Assembly (NCBI GenBank): GCA_002269645.1
Contig: NIVC01000827.1
Coordinates: 62,001 to 126,000 of the forward strand
Direction: 5' to 3'
From: Macrostomum lignano
Lineage: Eukaryota
DNA: 64,000 nt
The notes beneath the pieces were generated by a model that had not been told where the DNA came from, did no database searches, and worked only from the letters and a program-made list of their open reading frames with translations. Shown here piece by piece: positions 3,021 to 38,326 of this stretch (its first letter is position 1; the number at the start of each line of letters is the position of its first letter). The position numbers and the translations under genes were made by a program.

Positions 3021-3023
3021 AAG

Positions 3024-8188: not shown

Positions 8189-8194
8189 TGTTTT

Positions 8195-9914: not shown

Positions 9915-10140
9915 ACATATATTTTAAAATATTTCAATGGGTAATTAATATTTATAATTCGTCTTTTTTTCTGCATCTCCAATATTTTGTCCAAAGCCGG
10001 GCTTGTTATTACATTCGACTATTAGGTTGCCAGTAAAACAACATTACACTGGCTTGAATGTAAAGTTCTAGCTTGAATAACTCCTCCACCAGTTAGTAAT
10101 TTTATTGATGGATTGTTCAAGACACCACTTACTTCCTGAC
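9915..10140 (-). pseudogene. D5-like SF3 helicase C-terminal fragment
   Basis: Manual minus-strand translation: QEVSGVLNNPSIKLLTGGGVIQARTL..(frameshift)LIVECNNKPGF..GDAEKRRIININYP. This matches D5 motif B, motif C (CN.P) and the Arg finger. Confidence 0.7.
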
Positions 10141-10143
10141 TGA

Positions 10144-14082: not shown

Positions 14083-14147
14083 ATCCCTCACAGTCTGTAG
14101 CCTCACAACCTGTAAATAGCAGCGATATTTTTTCTGTAAATAGTGAA

Positions 14148-16505
14148 TTGAATTCTTCAGTGTATAACAGTACGCATGCGCAATCATTTAATCAATCATT
14201 TAATCAGCCAAACATTTATTCTCAGCACTTTTCAAACGCACCACAACAGCAACCTTATTCTAGCAAGCAGCAGCTAAAACAACCAAAATTAAATGAACCA
14301 ACTAGAAAGCAAAGTTACAATCCGTATATCACTGGCAGCATTTTAAATAAGGAAATAGCTTATCTATTAGACACTGGCAGTAATAGAAATATCTTAGGAC
14401 GCGAAACCTGGAAGCATCTTTTCACTGGCGAGAATAGGCATCTATTAAAGCATTGGGACAATAGAATTGTTTCTTTTATGGAAGAGCCTATTCCAATTAA
14501 GGGTTTCGTAGTTATTAGGGCAACATTTAGCGATTTCGAAGAAGTTGAGTTTCTCTTATGTGACGCAGATGTAGACAATGTAATAGGTGTGACGTTTGTC
14601 CAAAAATATTGTACTACCATTGACTTCGATGCAGGAATGCTAACCATGAAACAAGGAACTAGAATTCCGCTTCGATCAACCAGAGCTAAGCCTCAGGTTA
14701 GGAGAATCTATGTCGCAGAAAAGACGACAGTTCCAGCTAATAGTTTAGGATTAGTCAAGGTCAGATTAGCAGCAGGTAGTGAAACTAATTTCGGAGTGCC
14801 ATCAGTTGTTGAGCCACTCAGATCAGGATTAAAGACTAGAACAGAGAAAGTAACTGTAGTGCCAAGTTTAGTAACTCTAAGACAAGGGAAGCTTACGAGC
14901 GTATTTAGAAGTGATTAACACCAGTTCACAGGAAGCTAGAGTACCAGCATCAGCATTAGTAGGGATGGCTAAGCCACTCTTAGCTAGCGAGCTTAACTAT
15001 CTGAAGGAACAGCCAGGAGAAGAGCAGAATAAGAGCACGCAGTCTTGCGGAAGCAGAGAAAAGATCAGTCAGGTACAAGACAAGTCGGAAGACTGGATTA
15101 GTGAGATTAACATAGGAACTGAACTGACTCAGGAGCAGAGACAAAAGGTGATCGAGGTCGTCAAGGAACATTCAGCAGCTTTCTCGCAGCACGAGTTAGA
15201 CTTAGGCAGAACGCATTTAGTCACACATGAAATTATCTTGAAGGACAACAACCCAGTTCAGATACCAGCTAGGAAAATTCCACCTCATTGGATCAAGGAG
15301 GTAGATGAGCAGTTGGATCTCATGTTGGCTAGAGGCATAATTACTCGTAGGCCTAGTTACTCGCAGTACTCGACTCCATTAGTCATAGTACCTAAGAAAG
15401 ACGGCTCGCTGAGATTAGTTAACGACTTTCGAGCACTAAACAATAAATCTGAGTACTTTCCGTATCCAATAACTAATATCAATGAAACATTCTCATGTCT
15501 CCATGGAGCCAGTCAATTTTCTACGTTAGATCTATTTTCAGGATATTATCAGATAGCTCTTAGGGAAGAAGATAAGTGCAAGACTAGCTTTCCAACTTTA
15601 CATCGAGGCTCGTTTGAGTACGAAGTATTGCCAATGGGATTGCAAGGAGCTCCAGGAACTTTTCAACGGCGCATGAACTTAGTTCTTAAGGACATTGCAC
15701 AGAAGTTCGCCATAGCTTACTTAGCCATAGATGATGTAATAGTTTACAGTGCAGACTTTGAATCTCACTTAGAACACCTGAAAGAAGTGCTCAAAAGACT
15801 AATCCAAGCTAATATGAAACTAAAAGCGAAGAATTGTCACCTTTTCAAATCAGAACTGCAATATCTAGGACATGTCAGGCAAATCAGGAATTAAGAGAGA
15901 TGCGTCAAAATTAGAATCAATCAGAAACTGGCCGAAACCTAAATCTGTAACAGAGCTTCGAAGCTTTCTCGGACTATGTAATTACTATAGAAAATTCGTT
16001 AGAGATTTTGCCGAGGTAGCAGCACCACTCTGTGAGTTAACTAAGAAGAACATTAAATGTATCCAGGACAAATGGACCAGGATTCATGATGAATGCTTCG
16101 AGTTGTTAAAGGAACGGATATGCTCCGAAGAAGTGCTTGCTTACCAAGAGTTTATTACAGACCCCCAAATTTTTTTTGTTAGAAACTGATGCATCAGATG
16201 TCAGAATTGGGGCGGTCTTGAATCAAGTTCAGAGCGACGGAATTGAAAGGCCGATCGCGTATTATAGTCGGAAGATGAGGCAGTCAGAAACTAGATATCC
16301 GATTACGAGGAAGGAGCTTCTAGCGATTGTTGACTCACTGAAGTACTTTAGATTTCACCTCGTAGGAAAACGTTTTAAGGTGCGCACTGATCACAATGCC
16401 CTAACCTGGTTGCTTCGCCAAACCGAACAGACAGGCATTTTAGGTCGTTGGATCGAAAGACTTTCTGAATTTGATTTTGAGATAGAAGTGACCCTAAACA
16501 TGTGA
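14148..16505 (+). pseudogene. pol: Gypsy pol: aspartic protease, reverse transcriptase, RNase H (frameshifted)
   Basis: YLLDTGS, LRLVNDFRALN, FSTLDLFSGYYQI, MGLQGAPGTFQR, YL(AI)DD, LRSFLGLCNYY, LETDAS, ELLAIV, TDHNAL. Confidence 0.95.
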
Positions 16506-16840
16506 ATGCTGACGCTCTATCCAGGATCCCTGATCCTCAACCGGAAGAGATGTCCCCACATGCCAGGTCGCTAAGCTGTAGGGCAACTGTGAACACAGAC
16601 CCAGCATCAGCTTTTACTGTCAGCTCAGGCAATTCCGCGTTCACTGAAACCTGTAGCTCGAGCAGTGGAGTTCCGTCATGCTGTTCGTCACAAGACACTG
16701 TCACGAACCGACACAATACTCCGATCTTTAGTAGCAGTAGGCTAGACAATAAACAGGGACAGGAGCCTAAAGCTGGAAAGCCGCCTGCATGCAATGCCCT
16801 GCTCAGTGACTATCTCCGTAGCCCAGTTCGCCGTGACTAA

Positions 16841-18124
16841 TTGATCGCAGCACAGCTAGCCGATCCGGCGGTAGGCTTTGTTAGAAATTTAATTGAGAAT
16901 GACTCGCCTAAACCGACATTTCAAGAACGACTAGAGTTAACCCACGACTGTAGGAACCTCTTAGGGTACTACGAGTTGCTCAGAATTGAGGACGGTATAC
17001 TCAAAGTGGACTTATCTATGGGGCAGATTGATCCAAAGGTAGTATTGCCCAAGTCTCTGGATAGTGAAGTCTTTCACCAATTCCATGATTCACCGTTATT
17101 GGGACACCTAGGTCGAGATAAAACTTATCAGAGAATTAAAATTCGATTTTGGAGGCCAGGATTAGCAACAGCAGTTGAGCGCTACGTAGCCAAATGTAAA
17201 TCGTGCTTAGAAAGTAAGACTAGGAGAAGAATTAAGGCACCAATCCAGAACTACCTGTAGTCGAACCGTTCGGTAGACTACACATAGATCTGATAGGACC
17301 TATTGGCCAAACTAGCAAATCAGGAAACAAATATGTACTTTCAGTCATAGACAGCACTAGCAAATTTCCATTCGCATTCGCAATTAGGAATCAGAAGGCT
17401 AAAACAGTTATCAAAATTCTACAAGAACGAGTTTTCGCTGATTTTGGGATTCCACAATGGATTCACACAGACCAGGGAACACAGTTCACTGGTAGGGCCT
17501 TTAGGAAATTTTTAGACCTCTATGGCATTAGACACACTCGAACAACATCCGCAGAGCAATGGCTTAGTAGAAAACCTTAATAAGCAGATTAAATCAATTC
17601 TCACCTGTTTACTGGAGAAGGAGCATTCCAACTGGGACGTTCTGTTGCCAGGTTACATAACAGCTCTGAGAACTAGCACGCACACTGCCACAGGATTCAG
17701 TCCACACTATTTAGTCTTTAGAAGAGAGGCCAGAATGCCCTGTGACAATGAGCTGAACGAGCCAAAGCAGTTCCAGGATTTGCCATCTTATGTCCAGGAA
17801 CATCAGCAGAATCTGCAGGAAGGCCAAGAACTAGCGAGAAAGAGATTAAAATTAGTGCAGCAAAACCGTGAGCAGGAGTACTCTAATAAGCCTAAGCCGA
17901 AAACATTGCCTGTAGGAAGCTTAGTATTTATTAATAATCCAGTAATTGCTAACACAGAGGCCAACAAATTTCACAGAAAGCAAAGTGCAGTTTATGAAAT
18001 TGTAGAACAATTATCAAAAGTAGTTTTTAGGATCAGACCAGTTATTAAAAATAAGAAGGCTAGGAAGGAAGAACTTATCATGCATAGGGATAACTTAATG
18101 AACGTACCACAAGCAGATTATTAG
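16841..18124 (+). pseudogene. pol: Gypsy integrase (H2C2 finger + DDE core, frameshifted)
   Basis: HDSPLLGHLG..CKSC, LHIDLIGP, IHTDQGTQF, HPQSNGLVE, HTATGFSP. Confidence 0.9.
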
Positions 18125-18246: not shown

Positions 18247-18411
18247 GCAGTTTATGCCAGTGCAACATCAAATAATGAGCAGTTTATGCCAGTGCAACAT
18301 CAAATAATGAGCAGTTTATGCCAGTGCAAAATCAAATTAACGTGCAACATAAAAATAATGAGCAGTTTATGCCAGTGCAACATTAAAATAATGAGCAGTT
18401 ATGCCAGTGCA
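18247..18411. repeat. 32-33-bp tandem repeat in the pol 3' tail
   Basis: GCAGTTTATGCCAGTGCAACATCAAATAATGA units, about 5 degenerate copies. Confidence 0.85.
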
Positions 18412-18676
18412 TCCTCGAAATAATGTGCAGTCAGTGGCAGATCAACAAGTACAGCGTCAAAATTTTAATCAAAATAATCTAATAGGTGTACAAGGAGTTA
18501 TGCCAGTACAATTAAATAACAATACTAATCTAGGGATTAATTTAGAAGCTAGACCCGCGAGAGAGCGTCATGCTCCAGATAGGTTAACTGTCAGGCCAAA
18601 TCAGAAAAGTTACGTACAGAGGATAGCGGCGTTGTTTAACCCATTCAACCTCTTGCAGCCTAAATCCCAATAAGTC

Positions 18677-19240
18677 ATGGCCGACGCCCCACTCCGCGTC
18701 TATCTGAAAAAGCGAATCTATGGCCAGCAAAGAAGACAGGCAGCTTCAGAAAATTAACCCGCAAGAATTAGGGCTGTTCAAGAAGTGAGCGATAGTGTCG
18801 TGACAAGCAGTAAAAAGCAGAAATTAGAGCAGCCGGAAGAGGGCGGTGAGCCCGAAGGAAAACTGGTCGTAGACATAGACTTGGAAGAATTGGAAAGGGA
18901 GACGAAAAGAGAGGAAGAAGCGTTCCGAGAGGAGATGACCAGATTCATGGAAGAGGTACGACAGTATGAGGAAGGAAGCCAGCAGGAAGACGGATTAAAG
19001 GAAGAAGAAGAGCGACAGCAACCGGCAGAGGAGCCAGCCGAGCCGCAAGTGGACCCTGGCGAGCAAAAGAGGAAGTTTCGACGCTGCCGCCGGGCCCTCA
19101 AGTACATACTAAGGACGGGTAAAACCGGTATGTTCGAAACCGAGTTACCCGAGGCCTGCGCGTGTTTCTTAACGACAGCGACCAAGGAGGAGGCAATTAA
19201 GTGCTACGAAATAGCCTGTACCTATTGCCTCCAGTACGCG
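18677..19240 (+). pseudogene. Gypsy accessory ORF3 of unknown function, copy 1 (cut by LINE A)
   Basis: ATGGCCGACGCCC starts 4 nt after the pol-tail stop. Acidic coil then CRRALK..LPEAC..C.EIAC.YCLQYAE. Homologous to 35029-35845. Confidence 0.65.
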
Positions 19241-19242
19241 GA

Positions 19243-19992
19243 GACTCCTGTTTGATCAACTTCTACAAGGACGGGTCGATCAACATCCCCTGGCACTCTG
19301 ATGACGAGGTAGAGCTAGGGCCTAATCCGACAATAGCATCCATCTCGATTGGCGCAGCGCGCGACTTTCACATGCGCGCCAAAGGATCAACTAACATAGC
19401 ATGGTCTCAAAGACTCGCCAGTGGCTCGCTGCTGGTAATGAGCGGTGCTACTCAATCACACCTCCAACACGCGGTCCTCAAGGACCCTAAAGTCAAAGAG
19501 CTCAGAGTCAACCTTACGTTTAGACTCACGCACGACGCCAGAATTCCGGAAGTACTTCCTGCCTCTGCCCAGTCAAACCCTTGTGTGCAACCAGTCGAAA
19601 ACAGCATCACTTGCGATCTCGACGATGAGGACTCGGTTCGCCGCAGAGCAGAGCCGGAAGCGGAAAATTTGAGACAAATAAGATCACGTTCAAACAGTTG
19701 CACGGGGCGCAAACCTAGCAACCAGCAGCCAACCACTCAAACATCTCAACAAAACACCACGCAACTAGCTCATGAGCAGCCATCAACCATCAGCAAACAC
19801 TACTCGCAGCAACAAGCCAGCATCCAATCGCAGCAGCAGCAGCCGCCATCCGAAAACTCACAACAATCACTCACTCACCAGGCGCCACAGACAACAACAC
19901 AGCAACAGCAACAAACTGAAACTAAAATAACCTGCAATAGCCAACCTAGCCAAATTATCCAAAATAATCAGCTAAACCAACCTAAAGCTTAA
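19243..19992 (+). CDS. AlkB-family (ALKBH2/3-like) 2OG-Fe(II) dioxygenase domain of LINE A + Q/S/T-rich tail
   Basis: SCLINFY, WHSDDE (HxD), IASISIGAAR, GSLLVM, QHAV (distal His), RVNLTFR (RxxxxxR). Confidence 0.9.
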   Translation, partial: DSCLINFYKDGSINIPWHSDDEVELGPNPTIASISIGAARDFHMRAKGSTNIAWSQRLASGSLLVMSGATQSHLQHAVLKDPKVKELRVNLTFRLTHDARIPEVLPASAQSNPCVQPVENSITCDLDDEDSVRRRAEPEAENLRQIRSRSNSCTGRKPSNQQPTTQTSQQNTTQLAHEQPSTISKHYSQQQASIQSQQQQPPSENSQQSLTHQAPQTTTQQQQQTETKITCNSQPSQIIQNNQLNQPKA

Positions 19993-20068
19993 AGCCAAAC
20001 TAGCCAACCTAGCTCTAATCTAACCAACCAACTTAACACTGCAAGCAACAATTATCAGCTTAGAACTA

Positions 20069-21449
20069 ATGACAACTCAAAACCTAAAAACTCAGCCCCA
20101 GTCATCTTTGAGATTGAGCATGAAGGATCCCATCAAATTTGAGTGGTTTTTGAAAGACAACTTTCCTGAAATCAGAATTAAATCGGTCAAAGACCTATAC
20201 CATAGCTCTGGCTACATTGTAACACCAGAACATCCTAAGGATTTCAACAAATTACTAACAGCACCACTTAAAACTAACAAAATTAATGAATACGAAATAA
20301 CAAGACGCATGGCAGCCAAGAGGCCAATAAAACAAGGGGACGATCAGGTGCGTGCACCTCTCAAATCACCACAGGTGTACTCTTTTATTGTCAAATACGT
20401 CCCCATTGTGGTGGACGCTAAAGAGTTAGCAAAACACCAGGTGGAGTCAGAGCAGCAATTACCGATTGATGGCGCCGTGCGCATCATCTCCAAGGCAACA
20501 GGTGAACCATCACCGCATGTTCGCCTCTTCACGAAGAGCAAGGGCGCGATGGAGAGATGCATTGAGCACGGCGTCCATCTAGGCTTCAGCAGGTTTCGGT
20601 GTGAGGAGTCGATCAATCTCCCACCAGTCAAAGCTATCCAGTGCATGAAGTGTCAAAGACTAGGGCACCACGAGAAAAGATGCACAGCGTCAGCATACAG
20701 ATGTAATAAATGCGCAGGGGAACATTTCTCAGCTGACTGCCCCAAAGACCGCAAGTTCGAATGCGCCAACTGCGGGGGCGAGCACCCAGCGTATTCGTTC
20801 AAATTCCAAAAAATCAAGGAAGCTAACGAAATTGCAACTAAAAAAGCACATGAAAAAATCAGAGCACAGAGAGAGGAAGCAAAACAAAATCAGAACATCT
20901 TTGGTAGTCAGTCCCTAGGGGAGGCCTTTGGGGTACCAGGACTGCTATCCTACGCTGACGCAATGCGACCAATGCGACCTGGACTCACCAAGCCAATCCT
21001 GGGTCCCATCGCGTATTCTAACCGTGCCGCCGCCGCCGCCGCTGCCGCTGCCGCTGGCGACGCCCCACCAGCGGAAGCGCTGGCGAGTCGACATGCTCCG
21101 ACCAATCCGGCGGCAATCCAAATCTCCGCCAATCCGCCCACGCTGCCGGCAGTTGCCTCCGACTCCGTCACCATGGCCGCGCCCAAAACTAGGAGTTGAA
21201 AACGCCAATGACATGCGCAAATCAAGTGAGAGGGGCCTAATCTCCCGGATGGGGGTGCTTGAGGTTGTACTTCAGGCACTCACTCGGCTCATGGGCACTA
21301 ATCTGGGACGGATGCTCACCGAATGGGAAGCGGGGCAACTCGCAATCCAGGCGGTGACTGAAGTCCTGGCAGCACTCAGGAATCGAAGGGGACCTGATTC
21401 AGGGACAGGGGACACTGAAGCCGCGCAAGCGGGCGGAGGTGAAACCTGA
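20069..21449 (+). pseudogene. LINE A gag-like ORF1 (frameshift near 21200)
   Basis: CMKCQRLGHHEKRC, CNKCAGEHFSADC and CANCGGEHPAY knuckles preceded by a PRE_C2HC-like region. Confidence 0.9.
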
Positions 21450-21480
21450 ACCTGACCATTAAATTACGTTAAGCGTTAAC

Positions 21481-24130
21481 TTGATCTTCAATTTCAACTC
21501 ATCTAATAATTCACCTAAAAATAATGGGCCGGGAAAACAGTCTGTTGTGTGGGACTCTCTAAACATTGGGCATCTCAACTGCAACGGGCTTAGCAACAAA
21601 TTCTACGAGATTTCATCTTGGGTTAACAAAGAAGACTTAGATATTGGGCTTTTCTCTGAAACATGCCTAGAGGAAAAAAACAAATTTCACTTACCTGGGT
21701 ATGCCACGCTCCGGTTTGACGTCCCTAACTGTAGAAGAGGACTCGCAATTGTCTATAAAAACCATCTTGATGTTATGAATGTTGAAAAAAATTTCGATAA
21801 CTGTAATCACGAATTCATTAGCTTCGAAATTCATCTTAAAAATAACAAACTTAAGCAATTAAACGTGGTTCTCTTCTACAGAGCCCCAACCCCAACCCGG
21901 CTTGACTCCGAGGTGCTAGACCATTTTTTCTCTAGACCCTCTACCATAGTCATTGGAGACTTCAACTGCAACCATCCTGCCCTAGGGAGCGACACCCAGC
22001 TCAACTTCCCAGGAAAACAACTCTTCGAGTGGCTCGACTCCCAACCCAACCCACCCAACATCCTTAACAATTATGGAGACTGCACCAGGGTTAGCTATCG
22101 TAGCGGCTGTTCTAAGAAATGTCCTTGACCTTGGGATCTGCTCCCCGGACCTCTCCAAACACGCCAGTAATGTTATAGTGGGGGAAGATCTTGACAGCGA
22201 TCACCTCCCTATCATCATTAAAATATACCTCGACCCCAATTGCAAGCTTAAACAAAAACCACCCAAAAGTTTTTGGAACACCGACTGGGAGGCCTTCAGA
22301 GGCACCCTCCAAGATAAACTTAGTAACAATCAGATCCTCAGCCGCAGGTTCTCAACCCCTGAAGACCTTGATCACGCGGTAGACCTGCTCACTCAAAGTA
22401 TTCATGACACCATAGACGAAGTGGTTCCCAACAGAGACCCTAGGGAGCAGCTTCTCCCAGACATTATCAATAAAATTAAACATAGGAGGAAATCTATGCA
22501 CTAAAATAGCTAAAACAAGTTACAAGAAAGAACCTAAGAACTTTTGGATAGACATTAAGAAAATGACTGGAGAAGGCCCTAAGGCGATCAATTACCCGCT
22601 CCTCGTCTACAAAAATACACACGCTGAAACTGAAGCGGAAAAAGTCAAGCTGTTTAGCAACTTCCTTAAAGATCAGATGCAATGTCACCCCAAGCAAAAT
22701 TCAAAAATTTACAATAGAGTCATGGAAACCAAAGATCATGAGATCTTCAAACCCCACAACAATATTCTAGCTGCCCTTTCCTACCACAAATAGCATGCTA
22801 ACCCAGATAATCCCGATAATGAAGACATTGAAGGAGACATTCTAAACATTACTGATCAGGATGTCTTATGGGAAAGTAGGAAACTCAGGTCAGGAGGAGC
22901 TGCTGGTCCTGACAGAATACCCAACCTAGTTCTAAAATATGGATTCAGCCCAGACTCTATTAGAGTGCTCGCAAAAATCTTTAACTCAAGCTTCCTCCTA
23001 GGATACTTCCCCAAGCAATGGAAAAAAGCTACTATCAAAATGATCCCAAAACCAAATAAACCCAAATCATTAGTGGATAGCTACAGACCCATCAGCCTAA
23101 CCTCTTGCATTGGCAAATTGTATGAAAAAATCCTAGCTAGAGATCTCAGAATAATTCTAGAAAACCTAGGAATTATCAACGACGAACAATGTGCTTATAG
23201 ATACGATCATTGCACATACGATAATATAGTAAGACTCACCGACGATGTGCTGAAAATGCTCCAGTTGAAGCAGTACACGTTGGGAGTCTTCTTTGATGTT
23301 AAAGAAGCCTTTGACGGGGTCTGGCTGGACTTCCTTAAATATAAAATTCGGAAAAGTAAAGTCCCGCACAACATGGCACGAATTCTAGCAAATTATCTAG
23401 ACGATAGAACTGTGGAGCTTGTGGTTGGCGGAGCCCGGGGCGGGGAATTTCAGCCAATGGCAGGCGTTCCGCAGGGTGGGGTCCTCTCGCCCCTGCTTTT
23501 CATCATATTCGCCAGCTCTATTCCAAAGCCAACTGATAGCAAGGTTCAATTTAGTCAGTTTGCTGACGACCTAGCCGTATGGGCCTCAGTTAGAAAGTCC
23601 ACCATGGCAGCAAAAAGGCTGAACTCCTACTTTCTAGTCCTCAAAAAATGGTTAGACAATCTGGGCATTGTTATTAATCCCTCTAAAAGCACAGCCATCT
23701 CCTTCTTTAAACCTAATGGAAATAAAACTGGTCCAGGCGATCCTCCAGTTAAACTTGGGCACGACAAAATCAGGTACTATGACTCCGTCACCTTCTTAGG
23801 GATGGTCCTTGACAAGCAACTCAATTTTAAGGCCCATGTCGAAAAGATCATTGGGTCCTCCACGCTCAAAACTGCTGCACTTGCCAGAATGGCAAAAATT
23901 CCAGGATTTCGCAATTGGCTCTTCGCCTTATCTACAGGGCTTACATTGAGAGCACCATGACCTATGGGGCTCCAGTGCTTATCAACCTTCTCGATTCCCT
24001 TGTCAACAGGCTCCAAATCCTGCAAAATAAGGCACTGCGCATCTCGATTGACGCCCCGCCCTACACTAAGATATCTTACATCCATCAGGTCACCAAGATG
24101 CCTATGGTCAAAGAACGGCTGCTTATCCTT
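21481..24130 (+). pseudogene. LINE A ORF2: apurinic-like endonuclease + reverse transcriptase (frameshifted)
   Basis: HLNCNG, FSET, IGDFN, SDHLP; AAGPD, YRPISLTS, FFDVKEAFD, GVPQGGVLSP, QFADD, LQNKALR. Confidence 0.95.
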
Positions 24131-24133
24131 GTG

Positions 24134-25511
24134 TTGTACTCGCGGGCTGCGATCTCGTCTAGCCCGGTCGTTTTGTTTCCCCGGGGTAGCGGGTTCGGTG
24201 CGGGACTGCCCCGGGCGCGCGGCGGAGGGATGGACAGAGGACGAACGACTGGCGCTCCTCGAGGCGGATGGCCACTCCGAGGGGAAGAGGAAAAGATGCG
24301 ACCCGGGGCGCACAGGCACTCCTTGGTCACGGAAGGCTCGGGGTACTTCCACGGTCAGCGGAGCGGATAGCCACTCAGAGCCGGCCCGGGAGTCACCGAG
24401 GTGAATGTGAAACGAGGTGAAGGTGAAGGATTGGCCGGGGCGTATAGACACTCCGGACCAATCAAGAGATACGAGGTGATGGATTAGCTGGGGCGTACAG
24501 ACACTCCCAGCCAATCGAAGAGTGCAGGTGAGCAAGGGGGTGAGTAGGTGAAGCGATGAGGCGGCGAGGATGGAGGGAAGACACGTGCAGAGAGCCCCAA
24601 AAAACGCGAACGCAACCCGAATAAACGTAATTTAAGCTCACCGGGCGGGGTCGAACCGACTCATGCGACGCAGTTTATTTGGCCGTAGTAACTGTTCTGG
24701 CAGCTCGGAGACGGCGGGTGGCACGGATTAGCTTGCTACGAAGTGTTCCGATAGTTTACTGGGCTCGTGCAGTTTTGTACTTTTAAGATAGTTTTCTTAC
24801 TCAGTTGCTGGTGTAGCTCTAACCGCAAAAACCAAGCAGTGTGCCACCAACCGGCTCCAAGCCAGCTAATAAATAATATGCCAAAAATGGGGGAGTGGGC
24901 CAAACCGGCCTGAGCGCAAATACTCACACAACAGAACCCCGCGAGCACCCCACCCTAGCACAGCCAATCAAAACATACGCTGGGTAAGGCTTTACGAACG
25001 GGGGGGTAGAAAAGCGAGGGTCTGCCGTCCCAGCCAGCCGATCAGAACACACGCCGGCTGCCTAAAACCAAAACCGGCTGAACCAACTCAAACCAGCTAG
25101 GCCGGCAGACCGGGCGGTTCGCATGCAATAAAAAAAACATGTTGATGAGAAGGTCAGTGTGGCGCAGGCCACAACACTTGCTAAAAATGGTACAAAAAGC
25201 CCTGGAAAGCGATATCCATGGTTTTAAAAATGATACCAAAGAGTGGCTTAGACCCGGGTTCAGGGTCCCCTTTACTACCAAACTCTACGGTATAGAGAAT
25301 AGAAGCACTCGAGAGTGTCACCACACCTCGAGCCGCAGCGTGAACTCTGAGTGTCACAACACCAGAGGGATCGAATTATTATCGCAGAGCGTCGCCACGC
25401 CTGCTCGTCGTATTCATAAAAGTACAGACAGAGCGTCACAACGCCTGTTATATCACATATAATATATATTGTACTCGGGACTGGGCACCCAAGCCGACCC
25501 GGGTTACAACA
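24134..25511. mobile_element. Unidentified LTR-like insertion in LINE A with TGTTGTA...TACAACA termini
   Basis: Inverted 7-bp termini, GC-rich non-coding interior, interrupts the ORF2 C-terminus. No TSD found. Confidence 0.45.
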
Positions 25512-26094
25512 TAGGCAACAATGATTATAGGTAAACTTACCGGTACGGGTCTGTCCTCTGGTAGTGCAGCTTGCTGGTTCCAAAATGATGATTCGAAAGG
25601 GCTAGCCCATAGGGGTAGGGTCCCTTTTACTTACAATACTCCCTGGCACACCATACTTAAACATTCGTTTTCGTAAAGGTGTCAACAAATTTAGTTACCA
25701 TTCAAGCATTGAGAGCATCTACTCACAGTAGTAATCATCAAACCAGCTTTTATTTTATACTCTATCTTTCGAATTTCTCCTACAAACCTTTGTGCTTCAT
25801 CACTGTACATAACTCTTACACTCCTTTTCTGTTTTTAGTTTCAACCCTCACTCATTTGTTTTAACCATCTTACTCTCTTTCATTTGTTTTAAGTTTTATT
25901 TGCATTGTTTCATTGTATTTAGTTTTACTACTGTATCAATTAAATTTGTTTTTATTTTTACTCTTCCAAACTCGACCCTTAAAATACTATATACCAACGA
26001 GAACAAAAAATACATCAATTGCGTGAGAGCCCCCCCCCCAGGGCTGAGGCGCAGGGCCTTCGTTTGCCCAGTACTTATTAATGAATGAATGAAT

Positions 26095-26145
26095 CTTTGG
26101 AAAGCATCCTGCTTGCGCGTCTTGCGAATAACAAGGAATTTTTCA
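26095..26145 (+). mobile_element. Short remnant of a Gypsy LTR
   Basis: AAAGCATCCT..TTGCG....TTGCGA matches the LTR at 36554; AACAAGGAATTT matches the LTR at 43253. Confidence 0.5.
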
Positions 26146-27182
26146 AAAACTTAAGAACTTTGCCTAGGCCACCCAAGCTCTCTTCTAAAGTAGCTGTGTG
26201 GTTCTAGTTCTAATTCTAAATAACCGAATTCAATATCGAAAAAAGCCAAAAATCCAAAAAAATTAAATTGTAATTTTGCAATATATTACTGCATACTGTA
26301 ATCAATATATTTACATATAAAATACTGTAATACATTAATATTATTTATTTAACTGTTCCTGAGCAGCTTCCTTGCCTTCTTCTTTAAAATAACTTGCTCA
26401 GATAGGTATTAGGTAAATTTCTTTCTTCACCGGAGACCATCTGCACAAAAACCTCCTACAAAGCAAAGAGATTCCAATCAGATTCGCAATCGACTGCTTC
26501 CCGACTAATAATTTCAACTCCCAAAAAAATTCAAAGCTTTTTGTACTAAACTTTGTGAAGTGCGCAACAAAATTATCTAAATTTTAGTATTTTAATATCT
26601 TTCTTGTAGTAATAATTAGTCAACAGCAATGTCTAAATTACCTACCTTTACTAAAAAAGAGGTTGCGAACGCGGCTGAGCCACCAGCCAAAAGGCCAAAT
26701 AATAGGCAGTCCACGGACTTGCGACAAAATGAAAGAGCAATGGTCACGCCGCAGCTAAGGCAGGCCCCTGGCCGCACGTCGGTCCCGCCGGCAGAACGAC
26801 GGCGCCTTTCCCAAGGTGCCTCGGCAAAGACCACGCCCCCGCTGGAACCAGAAGTCCTTGAGCCCGGCTCGGATAATTCCTTGCCGGCAACAACGGCGAC
26901 CACCACTCCGAATTCACCGATTCTTGCTAACCCGACAGAAAGATCAAATTCACCAGGCAGCACCATATCAATCTCGTCGGCGAGCGGCTCTGCGACTGTG
27001 TTGGAAGGAGCTGGCCAAGCTGGCTCCAATGACCCCAACGCAGCCGCAGCAGCATCAGAATCTGATTCTGCCTCCGTGGCAGATTCTGCGCGCGACGTCA
27101 ACGTTGACCTGGATGCCGAGGACACTAGCATACCCTACGAGAACCCAATCGCTTTTCCAAGACAAGACAAGACAAGACCGGC

Positions 27183-28085
27183 ATGATATCTAAGTTGCCC
27201 AGCCAAGACGTCCGCCTGGTCTACTATCCAAATATGCTACGTAGTGTTGCCACCGATGACAGGCTAGTTCAAGACCTTCTTCCAATAGCTGTGAGACATC
27301 GGCCCCAGGAACAGCGTCGAGTTGTGTGGTACGGCCTGGAGTATTCTTATTCCGGTGTCCCGCTTGGCGCTAACCTGAAGTGGCACCCATTAGTAGAAGA
27401 TATGCGAGATTATCTAGAGCTCAATGCGGACATAAACGCACCTAAATTCAATAGCTGCCTCATCAACTTTTACGAATCGGCAGATGATTGTATACCTTAT
27501 CATGCTGATAACGAACCAGAGCTTGGCCAAGACCCCTTCATTGCTACGGTCTCCTTCGGAGCCGTGCGCCAGTTCTTGGTCAAGAATAACGAGGATCAGC
27601 GTGTAATTGCCCAATTTGAGACCAAACCCGGCTCGGTGATCGTAAAGTCGGGAGCCTGTCAGCAAAGATGTAAGCACAGTGTCCCAGGAGTCGGCGTGCA
27701 GGAGGGTGTACGCATCTCACTCACCTTTAGGGTGACCCATCAACCTGGCGTCGGCACACCGGGGCACGGAGGCGCGACAGCGGCAGCAGCACCCGTCGGG
27801 GATGGGCCTGGCAGAGGCGGGGCGGACTCCGGTCCTGCTACGCCGGGCCCCCGGACGAGCGTGGCGACCGGACAACCAGGCAGCAGTGGGGCGGCCGGCG
27901 CGCCCGGCCCTGCTGCGCTTGGCAGTTCCCGCAACCAAGTCCAAGACCGTAGCGGCAACGTTGGTGCGGGGCGCGGTGGCGCAGCTCAACGGCCTAACAT
28001 CCAAGGGCAACGCCCGAGCTACGCTGACCAGGCCAACCAATTCCAAGAACGGCTACCTTGTCTTCCCAGCGACGCCCAGAGATAA
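27183..28085 (+). CDS. Complete AlkB-family (ALKBH2/3-like) dioxygenase domain of LINE B + G/A/P-rich tail
   Basis: RRVVWYG..YSYSG, FNSCLINFY, YHADNE (HxD), IATVSFGAVR, KHSV (distal His), RISLTFR. Confidence 0.92.
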   Translation: MISKLPSQDVRLVYYPNMLRSVATDDRLVQDLLPIAVRHRPQEQRRVVWYGLEYSYSGVPLGANLKWHPLVEDMRDYLELNADINAPKFNSCLINFYESADDCIPYHADNEPELGQDPFIATVSFGAVRQFLVKNNEDQRVIAQFETKPGSVIVKSGACQQRCKHSVPGVGVQEGVRISLTFRVTHQPGVGTPGHGGATAAAAPVGDGPGRGGADSGPATPGPRTSVATGQPGSSGAAGAPGPAALGSSRNQVQDRSGNVGAGRGGAAQRPNIQGQRPSYADQANQFQERLPCLPSDAQR

Positions 28086-29273
28086 TCAGATCTTCCTCCG
28101 AGGGCCGCTGAAGGAGCCGAACATAAATGGTGTACCAGTTAACCGTAGACTGCCTAATGCCAGACCAACGTATAACAGACCCGCTGACCGGCCACCTCCA
28201 GTCCAATCGGTGCACTCTGTAGTAGTCCGGGGAGTGCCGGTCGAGATTGAGATGCCGGCGTTCATTCAGCACCTGCGGGAGGACGTGGGCTTGAAGGTTG
28301 TCTCCGCGAGCCGCATCACGTCGCGAGCGCGCAACGAGCCGACTCACTTCGTCCGCCTATTCCTACCAAATAAAGCCACTGCGGATGCTTGCCTGGCGAC
28401 AGGCATCGTATCGCAGTTCACGAGGTATGCCTGCGAACCAAGCAAGACGGCTGCTCCGGCTAGGGCGCTCCAGTGTCATAAGTGCCAGCGTTTCGGCCAC
28501 AGCGCGAATCGGTGTCGTGCTGCTCCGCGCTGCAACATCTGTGCGGCGGCGCACCGCTGGCAGGAGTGCCCGAATCCGGACGAAGCCAAATGTGCGAACT
28601 GGGGCGAGGCCCATCGAGCCAATTACAGGAACTGCATTGTAGCTGCTGAAAAGCACAGCCAGGCGGCCCGGCGCGCTGCAGCCTACCAAGCCGGCGCCCG
28701 GGAAGCCGCGGCAGCAGTGCAAGCAGCAGCTCCGCCACCAGTATTAGCAGCAGCAGCGACTGAGCGAGCTGCACCAACAATAGCGACGGTGTCGGCAGCA
28801 GCAGCAGCAGCAGCGGCGCCACCCGCCCCCGCACCGCGACCAGCTTTGGTGACTGCGCCTAGACCAATCGAGACCGCTGCACGGGCGTCAACGGCTACGG
28901 GGGGCACCGACGACTCGTCCTGGCTAACCGGCCCCGGCCTCCCTAGTCGAAAGCGCCCTGTGCGCGACTCGGTTGACTCTGTGACCCAGACGCAGTTGCC
29001 AAGTGATCCGCCGCCAAGTAATGACGTGCTGCCTAACATGCTCGCTGCCATGGAAGCTATGGTGAGTGGCTAGTTCAAGCGCTCGTAGAGGTGCTTACGA
29101 TCCTCTTGCCGAGCCAGGCCGAACGGCCGCCTACTACTGAAGGCACCGGTCAAACGCTGCAGGATGTAGTAGGTAGGGTTCTGGCCTGGGCCCTTGCAGG
29201 AGGGTCGGAAGGTCACCAAGGTCTCGGTCAGCTGCTCTGCGCCCCCCGGCGACAGGTGGATGGCCAGACCTAG
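27802..29273 (+). pseudogene. LINE B gag-like ORF1 (stop/frameshift near 29071)
   Basis: CHKCQRFGHSANRC, CNICAAAHRWQEC, CANWGEAHRANYRNC. The segment GYLVFPATPRD..PLK aligns with LINE A GYIVTPEHPKD..PLK. Confidence 0.9.
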
Positions 29274-29289
29274 AACGAAATAAATTAAT

Positions 29290-31280
29290 AATGTTCGGTA
29301 ATATTAATAACGGGCACGATAGCTCTAACCCCACTGCCTCAGGGCTCAAGATCGCCCACCTGAACTGCAGGGGGATAATAAATACCGAAATTAAAAGAAC
29401 TCAGGCTCTGGGTCTCAGACCACAAATTAGATATAGCGTTGTTCTCTGAGACCATCCTGAAAAATACCCAAGTATGCACATTCCCGGGCTATGCTGCAGT
29501 GCGGTTTGACCTTCCAAGTACGAAGCGCGGACTCCTCCTCGTACACACCCCACGGGTTAAGGTAGCTGATGTCCAGCTCTCGTACGACAACATTAACCAT
29601 GAGGTTCTTACCTGCACAGTCACCCCTCTTGACGGCGCTTGCGCTGCCTTTAAACTGGCCTTGATCTATCGGTCTCCATCGCCGGACAACCTTGATGTCA
29701 GTCTTTTGACTCGGCTGTCCTAGGCCAAATACTCTCTTGTTATGGGTGACCTCAACGCCAGGCACAATTTCTTGGGGGGCGACAGTCGCAATAACAGGGC
29801 TGGCCAACAGCTTCATGACTGGCTCTGCCGCGACCCTACAAATCGTCCCACCGTTCTAAACCAACCAGGTCAGTTCACCAGAATAGCCCATCGACAAGGA
29901 ACGGTCTCCCGAAATGTGCTGGACCTAGGTCTGGCCTCCAGTGACCTTGTCCCCTACATCCAGGACTTCAAAGTGGGTGACGACCTGAATAGCGACCACC
30001 TTCCAATTATTCTTACCTTGGCAAGCAACTCCCCAGACTGGCAAGGGCCAGAGAAGGCTCGAAATTTTGCTAAAGCCAACTGGGAGGAGTTCCAAAATAG
30101 CCTTATGGAAAAAGATCGACGCATGGCCTCCAGACCTTAGAACCAGGCAGCAGATTGATGCGGAGGTCGACTTCATCACCGGCGCGATCCAGGAGACTAT
30201 CGAAGAAAATGTCCCGGTCAGAAAAAGCCGTAGAGCCCTCCCCCAGAGGATCATTGCTATGATCAAGGAGAGGAGAAAGCTTCGGCGTCTGTACCATAGC
30301 ACCAGGGACGACAACTTCATGCTCCTCGCGAATAGGAAGGCGAAGGAAATAAAAGCGCCATTCGTTCGTTTGAGCAGGGCCAATTCACCAAATTGTGCGA
30401 GAAAATAGTTGAGAAAAGTCAGTGTCGGAATGTCAAGGACTTCTGGCAGGACACAAAAAATTAATGGGGCGCAAAAAGGGCACCACTTTTCCGTCCTTGA
30501 ATGATAGCGCCACCCTCGCACACACAGACTCTGACAAGGCTGATATGCTTGCGAGAGCCTTAGATGCCAAAATGCGCCCGATCCCGTCTACGGATGACGA
30601 GCTGAAGAAGAAGGTTGAGCAGACTATGAAGCTCCCACTCTTCAGACCTGTCCCACCCAGCGCGGAACCGCACATGGGCCACCCCCTGGAGGCTCCTATC
30701 TCTGTTACAGATACCCTCTGGGTGTCGCGACTTTCCTAGTCATTTCTTAGTTCACCTTCAATTGTCTCTGTTTACTCCATTTTCTCTCTCGCTGTCTAGC
30801 TCAATCTTGTTATTCTTATCTCTCTCTCCCTTGCTGCGTTCTGATTGGCTCTCCGTTCTCGCCTCTTTCCTCAGTCGCGCACTCCACCCCCTCTCTTTAT
30901 TATTCTGGGCTCAACCCCCCAAAGTTAAATGTTCTATAAATATATCGGTTTGGGCCCTGCGCCCACTTACTGCTCATCCTGCTCCTTCAATTTAACTCCA
31001 ATTAAATAGTCTTTAGTTTAGTATTTTTTCTACACTGGGAGCTGGACCATCTAAAGGTAGACAGCGCTCCGGGCCTGGACAAGGTGCCAAACTGCGTCCT
31101 GAAATATGGCCTGGAGTCCATTGCGGTTACACGCATAACCAAGCTCTTTAATGACTGCTACCGGGCAGGGATCTTCCCATCGCAATGGAAGAAAGCAGTA
31201 GTCACCATGATCCCGAAGCCGGACAAACCGCCTGAATCCCCGGGTTCCTATCGGCCCATCAGCCTGACCTCCTCCCATCA
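29290..31280 (+). pseudogene. LINE B ORF2: endonuclease + N-terminal RT, split by a solo LTR
   Basis: HLNCRG, FSET, MGDLNARH, SDHLP; TLWELDHLKVDSAPGLDKVPN restored after removing 30723-31039. Confidence 0.9.
30723..31034 (+). mobile_element. 312-bp solo LTR with 5-bp TSD CTGGG
   Basis: TG...CA termini, CTGGG at 30718-30722 and 31035-31039, internal CCAAT (reverse) and TATAAATA. Removal restores the LINE reading frame. Confidence 0.85.
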
Positions 31281-34920: not shown

Positions 34921-35028
34921 AAGCATCCTCGTTGCGATCCATTGCGATCTGACTTCAAAAAAGTTCTGTGCAGAGGATAGCGGAGTTGTTTAACCCATTT
35001 AACCTCTTGCAGCCAAAATCTCAATACT

Positions 35029-38296: not shown

Positions 38297-38326
38297 TTTA
38301 AAAAAAAGAAAATTTTAAATAAAATA

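What the first reader, a model, noticed from the sequence alone, without database searches (positions are those of the whole stretch)
19243..28085. Two divergent LINEs both carry an AlkB dioxygenase upstream of the gag-like ORF
Seen: LINE A (19243-19535) and LINE B (about 27280-27740) each encode an ALKBH2/3-like domain ahead of the three-knuckle ORF and APE-RT. The domains are only about 40% identical by eye over about 97 aa. Both keep HxD, the distal His and RxxxxxR, and both end LTFRxTH, although the surrounding ORFs are frameshifted. Known: AlkB enzymes demethylate m1A/m3C in single-stranded DNA/RNA and occur in plant RNA virus replicases; commonly described LINE ORF1 modules are RRM, CCHC, PHD, esterase and similar. 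Inference: an old LINE lineage keeps its own repair or demethylase module, perhaps protecting its RNA or TPRT cDNA or removing RT-blocking methylation. I cannot confirm that this is undescribed.
Basis: partly seen in the sequence, partly recalled or inferred. Interest (0 to 1): 0.88.

Follow-up and report, generated by a model that had tools for sequence, protein, structure and literature searches.

The report
LINE retrotransposons carrying an AlkB demethylase
Two decayed flatworm (Macrostomum-type) LINE retrotransposons belong to an old, multi-family lineage whose RNA-binding ORF1 protein begins with a catalytically intact ALKBH3-like demethylase, an accessory enzyme I could not find described for LINEs, which probably clears reverse-transcription-blocking methyl lesions from the element's own RNA or cDNA.

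Summary
Window 19243-19533 (LINE A) and 27207-27740 (LINE B) match Pfam 2OG-FeII_Oxy_2/AlkB (E 1e-25, 2e-21). They are 40% identical over 97 aa and keep N/Y, HxD, distal H and RxxxxxR.

Both copies are dead. A is 5'-truncated inside AlkB at 19243. B has a whole AlkB domain but frameshifts, and is cut in the RT.

Intact relatives show AlkB is the N-terminal domain of ORF1p, not a separate upstream gene: AlkB, linker, two RRMs, three CCHC knuckles. An APE-RT ORF2 follows. They come from Macrostomum lignano proteins and unidentified SRA assemblies.

At least four to five families, 32-53% identical in AlkB, keep every catalytic residue. AlkB has the lowest dN of any ORF1 region, and its divergence tracks APE divergence.

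The closest sequence and fold match is human ALKBH3 (TM 0.81-0.85). The host has its own intron-containing ALKBH3-like gene.

AlkB also occurs in the ORF1 of a Penelope-like element, and as a stand-alone ORF in an unrelated metagenomic LINE.

Nine literature searches found no AlkB-bearing LINE or PLE. The known parallels are plant-virus AlkB and an orchid Gypsy ALKBH5-like ORF. The function proposed here is inferred, not tested.

The parts
19243..24175 (+). LINE A: a 5'-truncated, decayed copy of an AlkB-LINE family. It is 85-94% aa identical to Macrostomum lignano proteins P0278 and P0132.
   Evidence: Homology of the upstream repeat to its paralogue stops at 19242/35691. tblastn of P0278/P0132 is. 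ORF2 covers aa 15-893 of 950 of the intact L001 ORF2. The 3' end is not defined; RT homology fades at 24121-24175.
19243..19533 (+). LINE A AlkB, C-terminal half only (Pfam profile 92-194). HxD is at 19294-19302, the distal H at 19468, and RxxxxxR at 19504-19524.
   Evidence: The intact N-terminal half of the family is seen in P0132/P0134.
19534..20127 (+). LINE A Q-rich linker of ORF1. It has an in-frame TAA at 19990-19992 and a frameshift near 20127.
   Evidence: Comparison with the continuous ORF of P0278/P0135.
20128..21199 (+). LINE A ORF1 RNA-binding part: two RRM-like modules and three CCHC knuckles (20642-20683, 20702-20740, 20762-20806). The third knuckle is mutated.
21481..24175 (+). 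LINE A ORF2: APE (about 21556-22300) and RT (about 22494-24121), with frame changes 1>2>3>2.
   Evidence: Pfam Exo_endo_phos and RVT_1. tblastn with the L001 ORF2 and database RTs.
26629..31275 (+). LINE B: a copy of a second family (AlkB 74% identical to P0001, 51% to the M. lignano P0128/P0282 group). It probably has its ORF1 start, is frameshifted, and is cut inside the RT.
   Evidence: An integrase ORF of another element follows at 31617-32510.
26629..27186 (+). Low-complexity ORF directly abutting the AlkB ORF (ATGA overlap at 27183-27186). It is the likely disordered N-terminus of ORF1, separated by a frameshift.
   Evidence: Position matches the 50-230 aa disordered N-termini of intact relatives. 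Homology to P0279 is NOT significant (E 0.23), so this assignment is inferred.
27207..27740 (+). LINE B AlkB: a complete ALKBH3-like domain. N/Y are at 27465/27471, HxD at 27501-27509, H at 27675, and RxxxxxR at 27711-27731.
   Evidence: Pfam. AF2 model pLDDT 89.5. Foldseek best match is ALKBH3, TM 0.81-0.85 over about 190 columns. PDB phmmer gives ALKBH3 at E 1e-21.
27741..29073 (+). LINE B linker (frame change about 27860-28050), then the RRM-like region and three CCHC knuckles (28474-28515, 28531-28569, 28591-28635; third mutated). ORF1 ends at 29073.
29327..31275 (+). LINE B ORF2: APE (29327-30113) and the N-terminal part of the RT (30187-30652, 31000-31275), in several frames, then truncated.

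Best explanation
Both window elements are dead copies of a lineage of APE-type LINEs. The lineage belongs to the Jockey/CR1-like superfamily and has a type-I ORF1.

In this lineage the ORF1 protein is a fusion: disordered N-terminus, a complete ALKBH3-type Fe(II)/2-oxoglutarate dioxygenase, a low-complexity linker, two RRMs and three CCHC knuckles. These points are shown.

The rest is inferred. ORF1p binds the RNA that encoded it, so the fused enzyme is delivered in cis to the element's own ribonucleoprotein. There it oxidatively removes N1-methyladenine and N3-methylcytosine from the single-stranded template RNA. It may also remove related base-pairing-face alkyl lesions, and may act on the first-strand cDNA or single-stranded target DNA during target-primed reverse transcription. 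These lesions are hard stops for reverse transcriptases. A 6-9 kb element that must be copied end to end gains full-length, retrotransposition-competent copies by carrying its own eraser.

The module was acquired once before the families diverged and was inherited with ORF2. Similar modules were taken up, or exchanged, by a Penelope-like element and by an unrelated LINE.
For: Identity and completeness of the domain:
- Pfam matches.
- All Fe(II) and 2OG ligands are invariant in nine TE-borne sequences from five groups.
- The AF2 model is confident (pLDDT 89.5) and superposes on human ALKBH3 bound to ssDNA (TM 0.81-0.85, rmsd about 2 A). That is better than on ALKBH2, and far better than on ALKBH6 or E. 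coli AlkB.
- phmmer gives ALKBH3 at 1e-21, ALKBH2 at 3e-12, and no E. coli AlkB.
- The counterparts of ALKBH3 R131 and Y143 are conserved.

Fusion to ORF1p:
- Single ORFs of 688-962 aa carry AlkB plus RRM and CCHC in P0129, P0130, P0136, P0147, P0278 and P0282.
- The tandem-RRM fold is supported by an AF2 model and by Foldseek hits to HuR, Pub1 and U2AF65 tandem RRMs.

LINE context: APE-RT ORF2 lies downstream in L001, L003, L009, L008 and L134.

Selection:
- AlkB has the lowest dN of the ORF1 regions in two family pairs, with omega about 0.1 and pN/pS about 0.27-0.29.
- 41 of the 56 invariant ORF1 columns lie in AlkB.
- AlkB and APE identity matrices are congruent.

Shared derived residues are rare in other AlkBs: FG-P, VP-FN, NSC, N-F-Y and TFR-T, seen in 10-12 of 12 TE sequences against 4-23% elsewhere.

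The host has its own intron-containing ALKBH3-like gene, so the TE copy is an addition.

The association recurs in other retroelements: PLE L007 and LINE L061.

Precedent: plant-virus AlkB domains repair m1A/m3C in RNA (PMC2553587). An orchid Gypsy element encodes an active AlkB-type RNA demethylase (PMC9289625). From established knowledge, ALKBH3 prefers single-stranded DNA and RNA, and AlkB treatment is used to remove RT stops in tRNA sequencing.
Against: - No biochemical or genetic test exists, so substrate and target are inferred from homology only.
- The counterpart of ALKBH3 D189 is G or P in the TE and bacterial sequences, so substrate preference may differ from the human enzyme.
- Nothing shows that LINE RNA in these animals carries m1A or m3C.
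- Cis-preference of this ORF1p is assumed by analogy.
- Monophyly of the TE AlkBs is recovered in the point-estimate NJ trees but has only 5-17% bootstrap support.
- The two window copies cannot make an active enzyme.
- The species behind the intact SRA-derived elements is unknown.
Confidence: 0.6

Rival explanations
1. Epitranscriptomic counter-defence. The domain erases a host-installed regulatory mark (m6A, or regulated m1A) from the element's RNA. This would escape reader-mediated decay, sequestration or chromatin silencing, rather than repair chemical damage.
For: An orchid Ty3/Gypsy lineage encodes an ALKBH5-like protein with demonstrated m6A demethylase activity, interpreted this way (PMC9289625). 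m6A writers and erasers modulate mammalian L1 (PMC7873242, listed). Recurrent capture by three kinds of retroelement fits an arms-race logic.
Against: The domain groups with ALKBH3/ALKBH2 and bacterial repair-type AlkBs, not with ALKBH5 or FTO. Neither of those appears among the listed sequence or fold matches. m6A does not block reverse transcription. In mammals m6A promotes L1, so erasing it would not obviously help.
Confidence: 0.15
2. A DNA-directed role. The enzyme works on DNA rather than on the template RNA. It could repair 3mC/1mA in single-stranded target or flap DNA at the integration site. It could also remove the 3mC that DNA methyltransferases deposit as a by-product on heavily methylated transposon DNA, protecting copies or insertion intermediates.
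For: ALKBH3/2 are DNA repair enzymes, and the best structural matches are ALKBH3-ssDNA complexes. A review states that Macrostomum lignano has retained DNMT1 and DNMT3 together with ALKB2, and that DNMTs introduce 3mC (PMC9246332). TPRT exposes single-stranded DNA.
Against: The domain is fused to the RNA-binding ORF1p rather than to ORF2p, which contacts the target DNA. In plant viruses the same kind of domain serves an RNA genome (PMC2553587). Nothing links these LINEs to DNMT activity.
Confidence: 0.15
3. A passenger or non-catalytic module. The AlkB fold serves only as a nucleic-acid-binding or oligomerisation domain, acts on a protein substrate, or is a transduced host fragment of no use to the element.
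For: Some AlkB homologues have non-repair roles. No activity data exist for these proteins.
Against: All seven metal and 2OG ligands are invariant across families that are only 32-53% identical. AlkB is the most constrained part of ORF1. The domain is present in every full-length ORF1 of all families found. A useless passenger would have decayed.
Confidence: 0.05

Closest known systems
Type I ORF1 proteins of Jockey-superfamily LINEs, especially type IC (PHD + 2 RRM + 3 CCHC) of CR1 subgroup 3 / L2 subgroup 2 (Khazina & Weichenrieder 2009; Metcalfe & Casane 2014, PMC4120745)
   Same: Two RRM-like modules followed by three CCHC knuckles. An extra globular domain is grafted on the N-terminal side. 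An APE-RT ORF2 lies downstream.
   Different: The extra domain is an AlkB dioxygenase, not a PHD finger. The published catalogue of ORF1 domains lists CCHC, RRM, PHD, coiled coil/Tnp22, esterase and zf/lz, with no oxygenase. The RT clade of the present elements was not placed against reference sequences.
Esterase-bearing (type IV) ORF1 of CR1/L2 LINEs (PMC3905857)
   Same: The esterase is the only enzymatic domain listed for LINE ORF1 in the catalogue I read (PMC4120745). It shows that ORF1 can carry a catalytic accessory module.
   Different: It has a different fold and chemistry (SGNH esterase, proposed lipid or membrane role), and it replaces the RRM/CCHC architecture rather than adding to it.
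AlkB domains in the replicase polyproteins of plant RNA viruses, Flexiviridae and others (van den Born et al. 2008, PMC2553587)
   Same: A selfish RNA-based replicator carries its own repair-type AlkB. Those enzymes remove m1A and m3C from RNA. Here too the domain is embedded in a larger replication-associated protein.
   Different: The hosts are plants and the replicons are RNA viruses with RdRp. Here the carrier is an animal retrotransposon, the fusion partner is the RNA chaperone ORF1p, and the polymerase that would be blocked is a reverse transcriptase.
ALKBH5-like ORF of giant Ty3/Gypsy (Tat/Ogre-like) elements of Phalaenopsis orchids (PMC9289625)
   Same: A retrotransposon-encoded AlkB-superfamily dioxygenase with RNA-binding and demethylase activity shown in vitro.
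   Different: That is an LTR retrotransposon of plants, with a separate extra ORF of the ALKBH5/ALKBH9 (m6A eraser) subfamily, acquired recently in one genus. Here the carriers are non-LTR and Penelope-like elements of animals, the subfamily is ALKBH3-like, and the domain is fused to ORF1p and old enough to span families 32-53% identical.
Human ALKBH3 (PDB 2iuw, 8jnk, 8jnr)
   Same: Best sequence match (E 1e-21) and best fold match (TM 0.81-0.85). The HxD...H triad, RxxxxxR, N/Y, and the R131 and Y143 counterparts are shared.
   Different: Identity is only about 30%. The D189 counterpart is G or P. Orthology is unresolved: bacterial AlkBs and the host's own ALKBH3-like gene are equally close at about 42-45%. 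The TE domain is intronless and sits inside a TE protein.
TET/JBP dioxygenases associated with Kyakuja-Dileera-Zisupton DNA transposons in fungi (Iyer et al. 2014; recalled from my own knowledge, not checked here)
   Same: A 2OG-Fe(II) nucleic-acid-modifying dioxygenase travelling with a transposable element.
   Different: It is a different dioxygenase family (5mC oxidation), the carriers are DNA transposons, and the hosts are fungi.

Membership tests
AlkB family of Fe(II)/2OG dioxygenases (Pfam PF13532) | Profile match above the curated threshold | tested here: met
   A scores 91.3 bits and B 77.7 bits against a cut-off of 31.2. Relatives score 70-110 bits.
AlkB family of Fe(II)/2OG dioxygenases (Pfam PF13532) | HxD...H iron triad, RxxxxxR and N/Y 2-oxoglutarate ligands | tested here: met
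   These residues are invariant in both window copies and in all TE-borne relatives aligned.
AlkB family of Fe(II)/2OG dioxygenases (Pfam PF13532) | Complete double-stranded beta-helix core with N-terminal nucleotide-recognition part | tested here: met
   Met for LINE B: AF2 pLDDT 89.5, and about 190 of 193 residues superpose on ALKBH3. NOT met for the window's LINE A copy, which has only profile positions 92-194 because of 5' truncation. Intact members of family A have the whole domain (P0132).
AlkB family of Fe(II)/2OG dioxygenases (Pfam PF13532) | Oxidative demethylase activity | not testable with these tools
   Needs enzyme assays.
ALKBH3 subfamily (ssDNA/RNA m1A/m3C demethylase) | Closer to ALKBH3 than to other AlkB homologues in sequence and fold | tested here: met
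   phmmer gives ALKBH3 at 1e-21 against ALKBH2 at 3e-12, with no others at or below 1e-3. Foldseek ranks 1-9 are all ALKBH3.
ALKBH3 subfamily (ssDNA/RNA m1A/m3C demethylase) | Phylogenetic placement inside the ALKBH3 clade with support; substrate-contact residues | tested here: inconclusive
   NJ trees on 148 columns are poorly supported. Animal ALKBH3, the host ALKBH3-like protein and bacterial AlkBs are about equally distant. The R131 and Y143 counterparts are kept; the D189 counterpart is not.
APE-type non-LTR retrotransposon (LINE) | ORF2 with apurinic-like endonuclease followed by reverse transcriptase | tested here: met
   Window A and B. Intact 950-aa ORF2 in L001.
APE-type non-LTR retrotransposon (LINE) | ORF1 nucleic-acid chaperone (RRM + CCHC, type I) | tested here: met
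   Three CCHC motifs (Pfam zf-CCHC in P0136 and P0282). Tandem-RRM fold.
APE-type non-LTR retrotransposon (LINE) | Multicopy, with 5'-truncated copies | tested here: met
   LINE A is truncated at 19243. Many M. lignano and SRA copies exist.
APE-type non-LTR retrotransposon (LINE) | 3' poly(A) or microsatellite tail and target-site duplication | tested here: inconclusive
   Both window copies lose homology before a recognisable 3' end. No tail or TSD was identified.
Jockey clade / Jockey superfamily | RT groups with reference Jockey/CR1/L2 RTs in a phylogeny | not tested
   No reference RT library was at hand. The best named database hits (31-38% identity) are labelled jockey or BS, and the ORF1 is type I. 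The superfamily is likely; the clade is open.
Penelope-like element (for locus L007 only) | RT followed by a C-terminal GIY-YIG endonuclease in one ORF | tested here: met
   RVT_1 and GIY-YIG hits are weak (E about 3e-3 each) but in the right order. YIDD and GIY...YVG motifs can be read in the translation. The upstream 1012-aa ORF has PF13532 at 5e-31.

The most novel reading that the evidence does not exclude
Retroelements of at least three kinds have each taken up a repair-type AlkB demethylase: Macrostomum-type LINEs (fused to ORF1p), a Penelope-like element (in its ORF1), and an unrelated PHD/C-rich-ORF2 LINE (a stand-alone ORF). This would mean that base methylation of the template RNA or cDNA is a general, so far unrecognised barrier to reverse transcription in vivo. 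The methylation could be m1A/m3C damage or host-installed marks. Element-encoded erasers would then be a counter-measure, an animal retrotransposon analogue of the plant-virus AlkB story.
Probability: 0.35. Interest if true: 0.85.

Novelty: new variant of a known kind. Interest (0 to 1): 0.75.

Why it matters
In the ORF1 domain catalogue I read (PMC4120745), the only enzymatic domain is an esterase of unknown role. A conserved, catalytically intact nucleic-acid demethylase fused to the RNA chaperone would be a second enzymatic domain, and one with a readable function.

It gives a direct and testable handle on whether methyl lesions or marks on LINE RNA or cDNA limit retrotransposition. It links transposon biology to the AlkB repair and epitranscriptome field. 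It also extends the 'selfish replicator carries its own AlkB' theme from plant RNA viruses and one orchid LTR element to animal non-LTR and Penelope-like elements.

Practically, the many TE-borne AlkB copies can confound presence/absence calls of ALKBH2/3 in flatworm genomes. Such calls are used in DNMT-ALKB2 co-evolution arguments. M. lignano is transgenesis-capable, so the function can be tested in vivo.

Tried and rejected
1. The ORF upstream of LINE A (18785-19255) as the 5' part of the LINE or the missing N-half of AlkB: rejected. It has a paralogue at 34955-35691 not followed by AlkB, and homology stops exactly at 19242. It has no Pfam hit.
2. The ORF 26629-27186 as a demonstrable homologue of the N-terminus of the M. 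lignano B-like ORF1: not supported (BLASTP E 0.23). It is kept only as a positional inference.
3. Exact look-up of the window's AlkB ORF in the assemblies index: not on record.
4. The third homologue search, with the full ORF1 alignment, was swamped by low-complexity words. It returned only 4 hits. One was a protist SR-rich AlkB protein and one was an AlkB-less gag-like ORF1.
5. A robust AlkB phylogeny was not obtained. TE monophyly appears in BLOSUM-distance NJ trees but with 5-17% bootstrap support, so I lean on shared signature residues and AlkB/APE congruence instead.
6. Within-family dN/dS was not possible. Contigs of one family from different SRA runs are identical in ORF1: 0 differences in 2.5-2.7 kb, and 1 nonsynonymous difference between P0129 and P0277. 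Between-family dS is saturated, so omega values are rough.
7. The small ORF between ORF1 and ORF2 in L001/L005 as a conserved extra gene: no similarity between families.
8. Identifying the species of the SRA runs through a recent M. lignano TE paper: no matching accessions.
9. Using 97-99% identity between two M. lignano loci as proof of recent transposition: rejected. The flanks align too, so they may be duplicated or homeologous segments.

Full report
**1. What is in the window**

The 64-kb window is a transposon-rich stretch of eukaryotic DNA.

Between 19.2 and 31.3 kb, on the + strand, lie two non-LTR retrotransposons. They share the same order of parts but little sequence:
- AlkB: 40% identical over 97 aa.
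- Gag-like region: 35-37% identical.
- APE: 37% identical.

Pfam assigns 19201-19992 and 27183-28085 to PF13532 (2OG-FeII_Oxy_2, the AlkB family) at E 1.2e-25 and 1.7e-21.

**2. State of the two copies**

LINE A starts abruptly at 19243, in the middle of the AlkB domain (Pfam profile positions 92-194 only).
- The ORF just upstream (18785-19255) is not part of it. The stretch 18601-19242 has a paralogue at 34955-35691, and the similarity ends exactly at the junction.
- So A is a 5'-truncated insertion, the usual fate of LINE copies.
- Its ORF1 has an in-frame TAA (19990-19992) and a frameshift near 20127, compared with the continuous ORF of close relatives.
- Its ORF2 covers aa 15-893 of a 950-aa intact relative, in four frame segments.

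LINE B has the whole AlkB domain (27207-27740).
- It is preceded by a low-complexity ORF (26629-27186) whose stop overlaps the AlkB ORF's ATG.
- This is probably the disordered ORF1 N-terminus cut off by a frameshift, but homology could not be shown.
- B has a further frame change before the RRM/CCHC part. Its ORF2 is in five frame segments and ends inside the RT at about 31275.
- In both copies the third zinc knuckle is mutated.

Neither copy can be active.

**3. Relatives**

An exhaustive HMMER search of 1.84 billion cluster representatives with the LINE B domain gave long proteins as its best hits (350-960 aa). Ordinary ~200-aa bacterial AlkBs follow at 35-45% identity.

The long proteins are AlkB plus gag-like fusions in one reading frame:
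- P0129, 962 aa
- P0130, 757 aa
- P0136, 892 aa
- P0147, 843 aa
- P0278, 861 aa
- P0282, 688 aa

Sources:
- P0132, P0134, P0135 and P0278 are Macrostomum lignano proteins, 85-94% identical to LINE A.
- P0128, P0279 and P0282 are M. lignano proteins 51% identical to LINE B.
- The window therefore comes from Macrostomum lignano or a close relative.
- The other proteins come from Logan assemblies of SRA runs whose organism I could not determine.

Fetching the contigs shows complete elements:
- L001 (9.1 kb) has ORF1 (AlkB-RRM-CCHC, 843 aa) followed by a 950-aa ORF2 with APE and RT.
- In L003 the 962-aa ORF1 is followed at the next codon by an ORF2 opening with APE.
- L009, L008 and L134 show the same order.

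So AlkB is the N-terminal domain of ORF1p, not a separate upstream gene.

An AF2 model of the region after the linker shows two beta-alpha-beta-beta-alpha-beta modules. All its best Foldseek matches are tandem RRM proteins. With the three knuckles, this is a type I ORF1.

The architecture parallels the 'type IC' ORF1 (PHD + 2 RRM + 3 CCHC) described for some CR1/L2 elements. Here the PHD finger is replaced by AlkB.

**4. Is the domain kept by selection?**

An alignment of nine TE-borne domains from five groups, 28-49% identical to LINE B, keeps every catalytic residue: the N and Y that bind 2OG, HxD, the distal H and both R of RxxxxxR.

In the alignment of full ORF1 proteins, 41 of the 56 invariant columns lie in AlkB.

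Nei-Gojobori estimates:

| Pair | AlkB dN | RRM-CCHC dN | Linker / C-terminus dN | pN/pS | omega |
|---|---|---|---|---|---|
| P0129/P0130 | 0.23 | 0.28 | 0.72 / 0.50 | 0.27 | about 0.1 (dS saturated) |
| P0147/P0136 | 0.29 | 0.34 | 0.68 / 0.61 | 0.29 | not computable (dS saturated) |

Pairwise identities of AlkB and APE give the same grouping. B with the M. lignano B-like family: 53% and 47-49%. P0129 with P0130: 73% and 59-60%. All other pairs: 32-52% and 35-43%. This is what co-inheritance since a common ancestor predicts.

Neither is met.

**5. What kind of AlkB**

- Against all PDB sequences, the best match is human ALKBH3 (E 1e-21). ALKBH2 follows at 3e-12. E. coli AlkB, ALKBH5 and FTO do not reach 1e-3.
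- The AF2 model of the LINE B domain (pLDDT 89.5, pTM 0.87) superposes on ALKBH3-ssDNA complexes with TM 0.81-0.85 and rmsd about 2 A over about 190 columns. ALKBH2 gives 0.73-0.80, and ALKBH6 and E. coli AlkB about 0.65-0.70.
- The counterparts of ALKBH3 R131 and Y143 are conserved. D189 is G or P, as in bacterial relatives.

Among non-TE proteins, three kinds are about equally close at 42-45%: bacterial AlkBs, a nematomorph ALKBH3-like protein, and M. lignano P0140/P0286. P0286 is an RS-rich plus ALKBH3-like protein encoded by a 3.1-kb gene for a 490-aa product, so it has introns. It sits between ordinary genes and is probably the host's own ALKBH3.

NJ trees put all TE-borne domains in one clade when BLOSUM-type distances are used, but bootstrap support is only 5-17%. 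Five residues shared by 10-12 of 12 TE sequences, and by only 4-23% of other AlkBs, support a common origin. The donor, host or bacterium, is unresolved.

**6. Beyond these LINEs**

- L007 (SRR19430222) has a 1012-aa ORF1 with a TE-type AlkB: 37% identical to LINE B, with all signature residues. It is followed by an ORF with an RT (YIDD) and a C-terminal GIY-YIG nuclease, which makes it a Penelope-like element.
Only one, L061 (6.4 kb, 36% GC), showed RT homology.
- L061 is a different LINE. It has a 284-aa ORF1, a stand-alone 207-aa AlkB ORF (PF13532 at 1.8e-21, catalytic residues kept), and a 1257-aa ORF2 with a Cys/His-rich N-terminus, APE and RT.
- Its AlkB is only 27-35% identical to the flatworm-type ones, and its RT only 27% identical to the L001 ORF2 RT. 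This suggests an independent capture.

**7. Mechanism**

Shown: the fusion protein, its completeness, its conservation, and its linkage to ORF2.

Inferred:
- ORF1p assembles on the RNA that encoded it, so it brings the dioxygenase to the element's RNP.
- ALKBH3-type enzymes act on single-stranded RNA and DNA and remove m1A and m3C. These lesions block base pairing and stop reverse transcriptases.
- Removing them from a 6-9 kb template, and possibly from the nascent cDNA or the exposed target strand, would raise the yield of full-length copies.
- The closest functional precedent is the AlkB domain of plant RNA viruses, which repairs m1A/m3C in RNA (PMC2553587).

Rivals:
- An m6A or regulatory-mark eraser, as proposed for the orchid Gypsy ALKBH5-like protein (PMC9289625). 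This is less likely given the subfamily.
- A DNA-side role, such as removing DNMT-generated 3mC. A review reports that Macrostomum lignano has retained DNMT1 and DNMT3 (PMC9246332).
- A non-catalytic role, which the invariant active site contradicts.

**8. Novelty**

Nine full-text searches found no report of AlkB in a LINE or a Penelope-like element.

The survey of ORF1 domains in the Jockey superfamily lists CCHC, RRM, PHD, coiled coil/Tnp22, esterase and zf/lz only (PMC4120745).

Repbase and Dfam could not be queried, so a catalogue entry cannot be excluded.

I rate it a new variant of a known kind: a LINE with a new accessory enzyme, paralleling virus-borne and LTR-element-borne AlkB.

**9. 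Caveats**

- There are no activity data.
- The RT clade was not placed.
- The AlkB tree is weakly supported.
- dS is saturated.
- The species of the intact elements is unknown.
- The 5' boundary of LINE B and the 3' ends of both window copies are undefined.

Noticed in passing
window 38276-38827 (+), 37306-38296 (-), 33176-34162 (-): An ORF with a parvovirus-VP1-type phospholipase A2 domain (PF08398, E 2e-13) lies next to an rve integrase on the other strand (PF00665, E 1.2e-8). About 4 kb away is an ORF with a weak double-jelly-roll-like hit (PF21738, E 1.4e-4, below cut-off). These may be remnants of a Polinton/Maverick- or adintovirus-like integrated element.
   Followed up: partly
window 18601-19242 and 34955-35691; direct repeats 34919-34962 / 36553-36596: A repeated element bearing a Glu-rich ORF with no Pfam hit (75% nt, 48% aa identity between copies). 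The second copy is flanked by 44-bp direct repeats. LINE A's truncated 5' end abuts the first copy exactly where the homology stops. Its nature is unknown.
   Followed up: partly
L007 (logan SRR19430222_281972) 2120-5158 and 5149-7395: A Penelope-like element (RT + GIY-YIG) whose 1012-aa upstream ORF carries a TE-type AlkB domain. This puts AlkB in a second class of retroelement.
   Followed up: partly
L061 (JGI Ga0115564_10011537) 56-910, 1021-1644, 1716-5489: An AT-rich LINE from a metagenome with a stand-alone 207-aa AlkB ORF between ORF1 and a 1257-aa ORF2 (Cys/His-rich N-terminus + APE + RT). Its AlkB is only 27-35% identical to the flatworm-type ones, so it is likely an independent capture.
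   Followed up: partly
L135 (M. lignano NIVC01003020.1) 6001-9068; proteins P0286/P0140: An intron-containing host gene for an RS-rich, ALKBH3-like protein, among the closest non-TE relatives of the TE domain. Published presence/absence calls of ALKB2 in Macrostomum (PMC9246332) could be confounded by the many TE-borne AlkB ORFs. This is untested.
   Followed up: partly
L134 (M. lignano NIVC01003829.1) 1457-5103 and 5940-11543; L008 9992-16443 and 16443 onwards: AlkB-LINE copies of the B-like family lie head to tail in both loci. The two loci are 97-99% identical, flanks included, so they may be duplicated or homeologous segments of this neopolyploid genome.
   Followed up: no
window 653-1297; 13342-18124; 31617-32510; 50372-51046; 18247-18431: Other mobile-element remnants are present: a PIF1-helicase fragment (Helitron-like), an LTR-retrotransposon gag-pol (CCHC, RT, Integrase_H2C2, integrase C-terminus), two further integrase fragments, and a 32-nt tandem repeat.
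   Followed up: no
protein P0284 (EukProt transcript, 977 aa): A protist protein with a long Arg/Ser-rich N-terminal region and a C-terminal AlkB domain. M. lignano P0286 has a similar RS-rich plus AlkB layout. This hints at RNA-directed AlkB proteins outside transposons.
   Followed up: no
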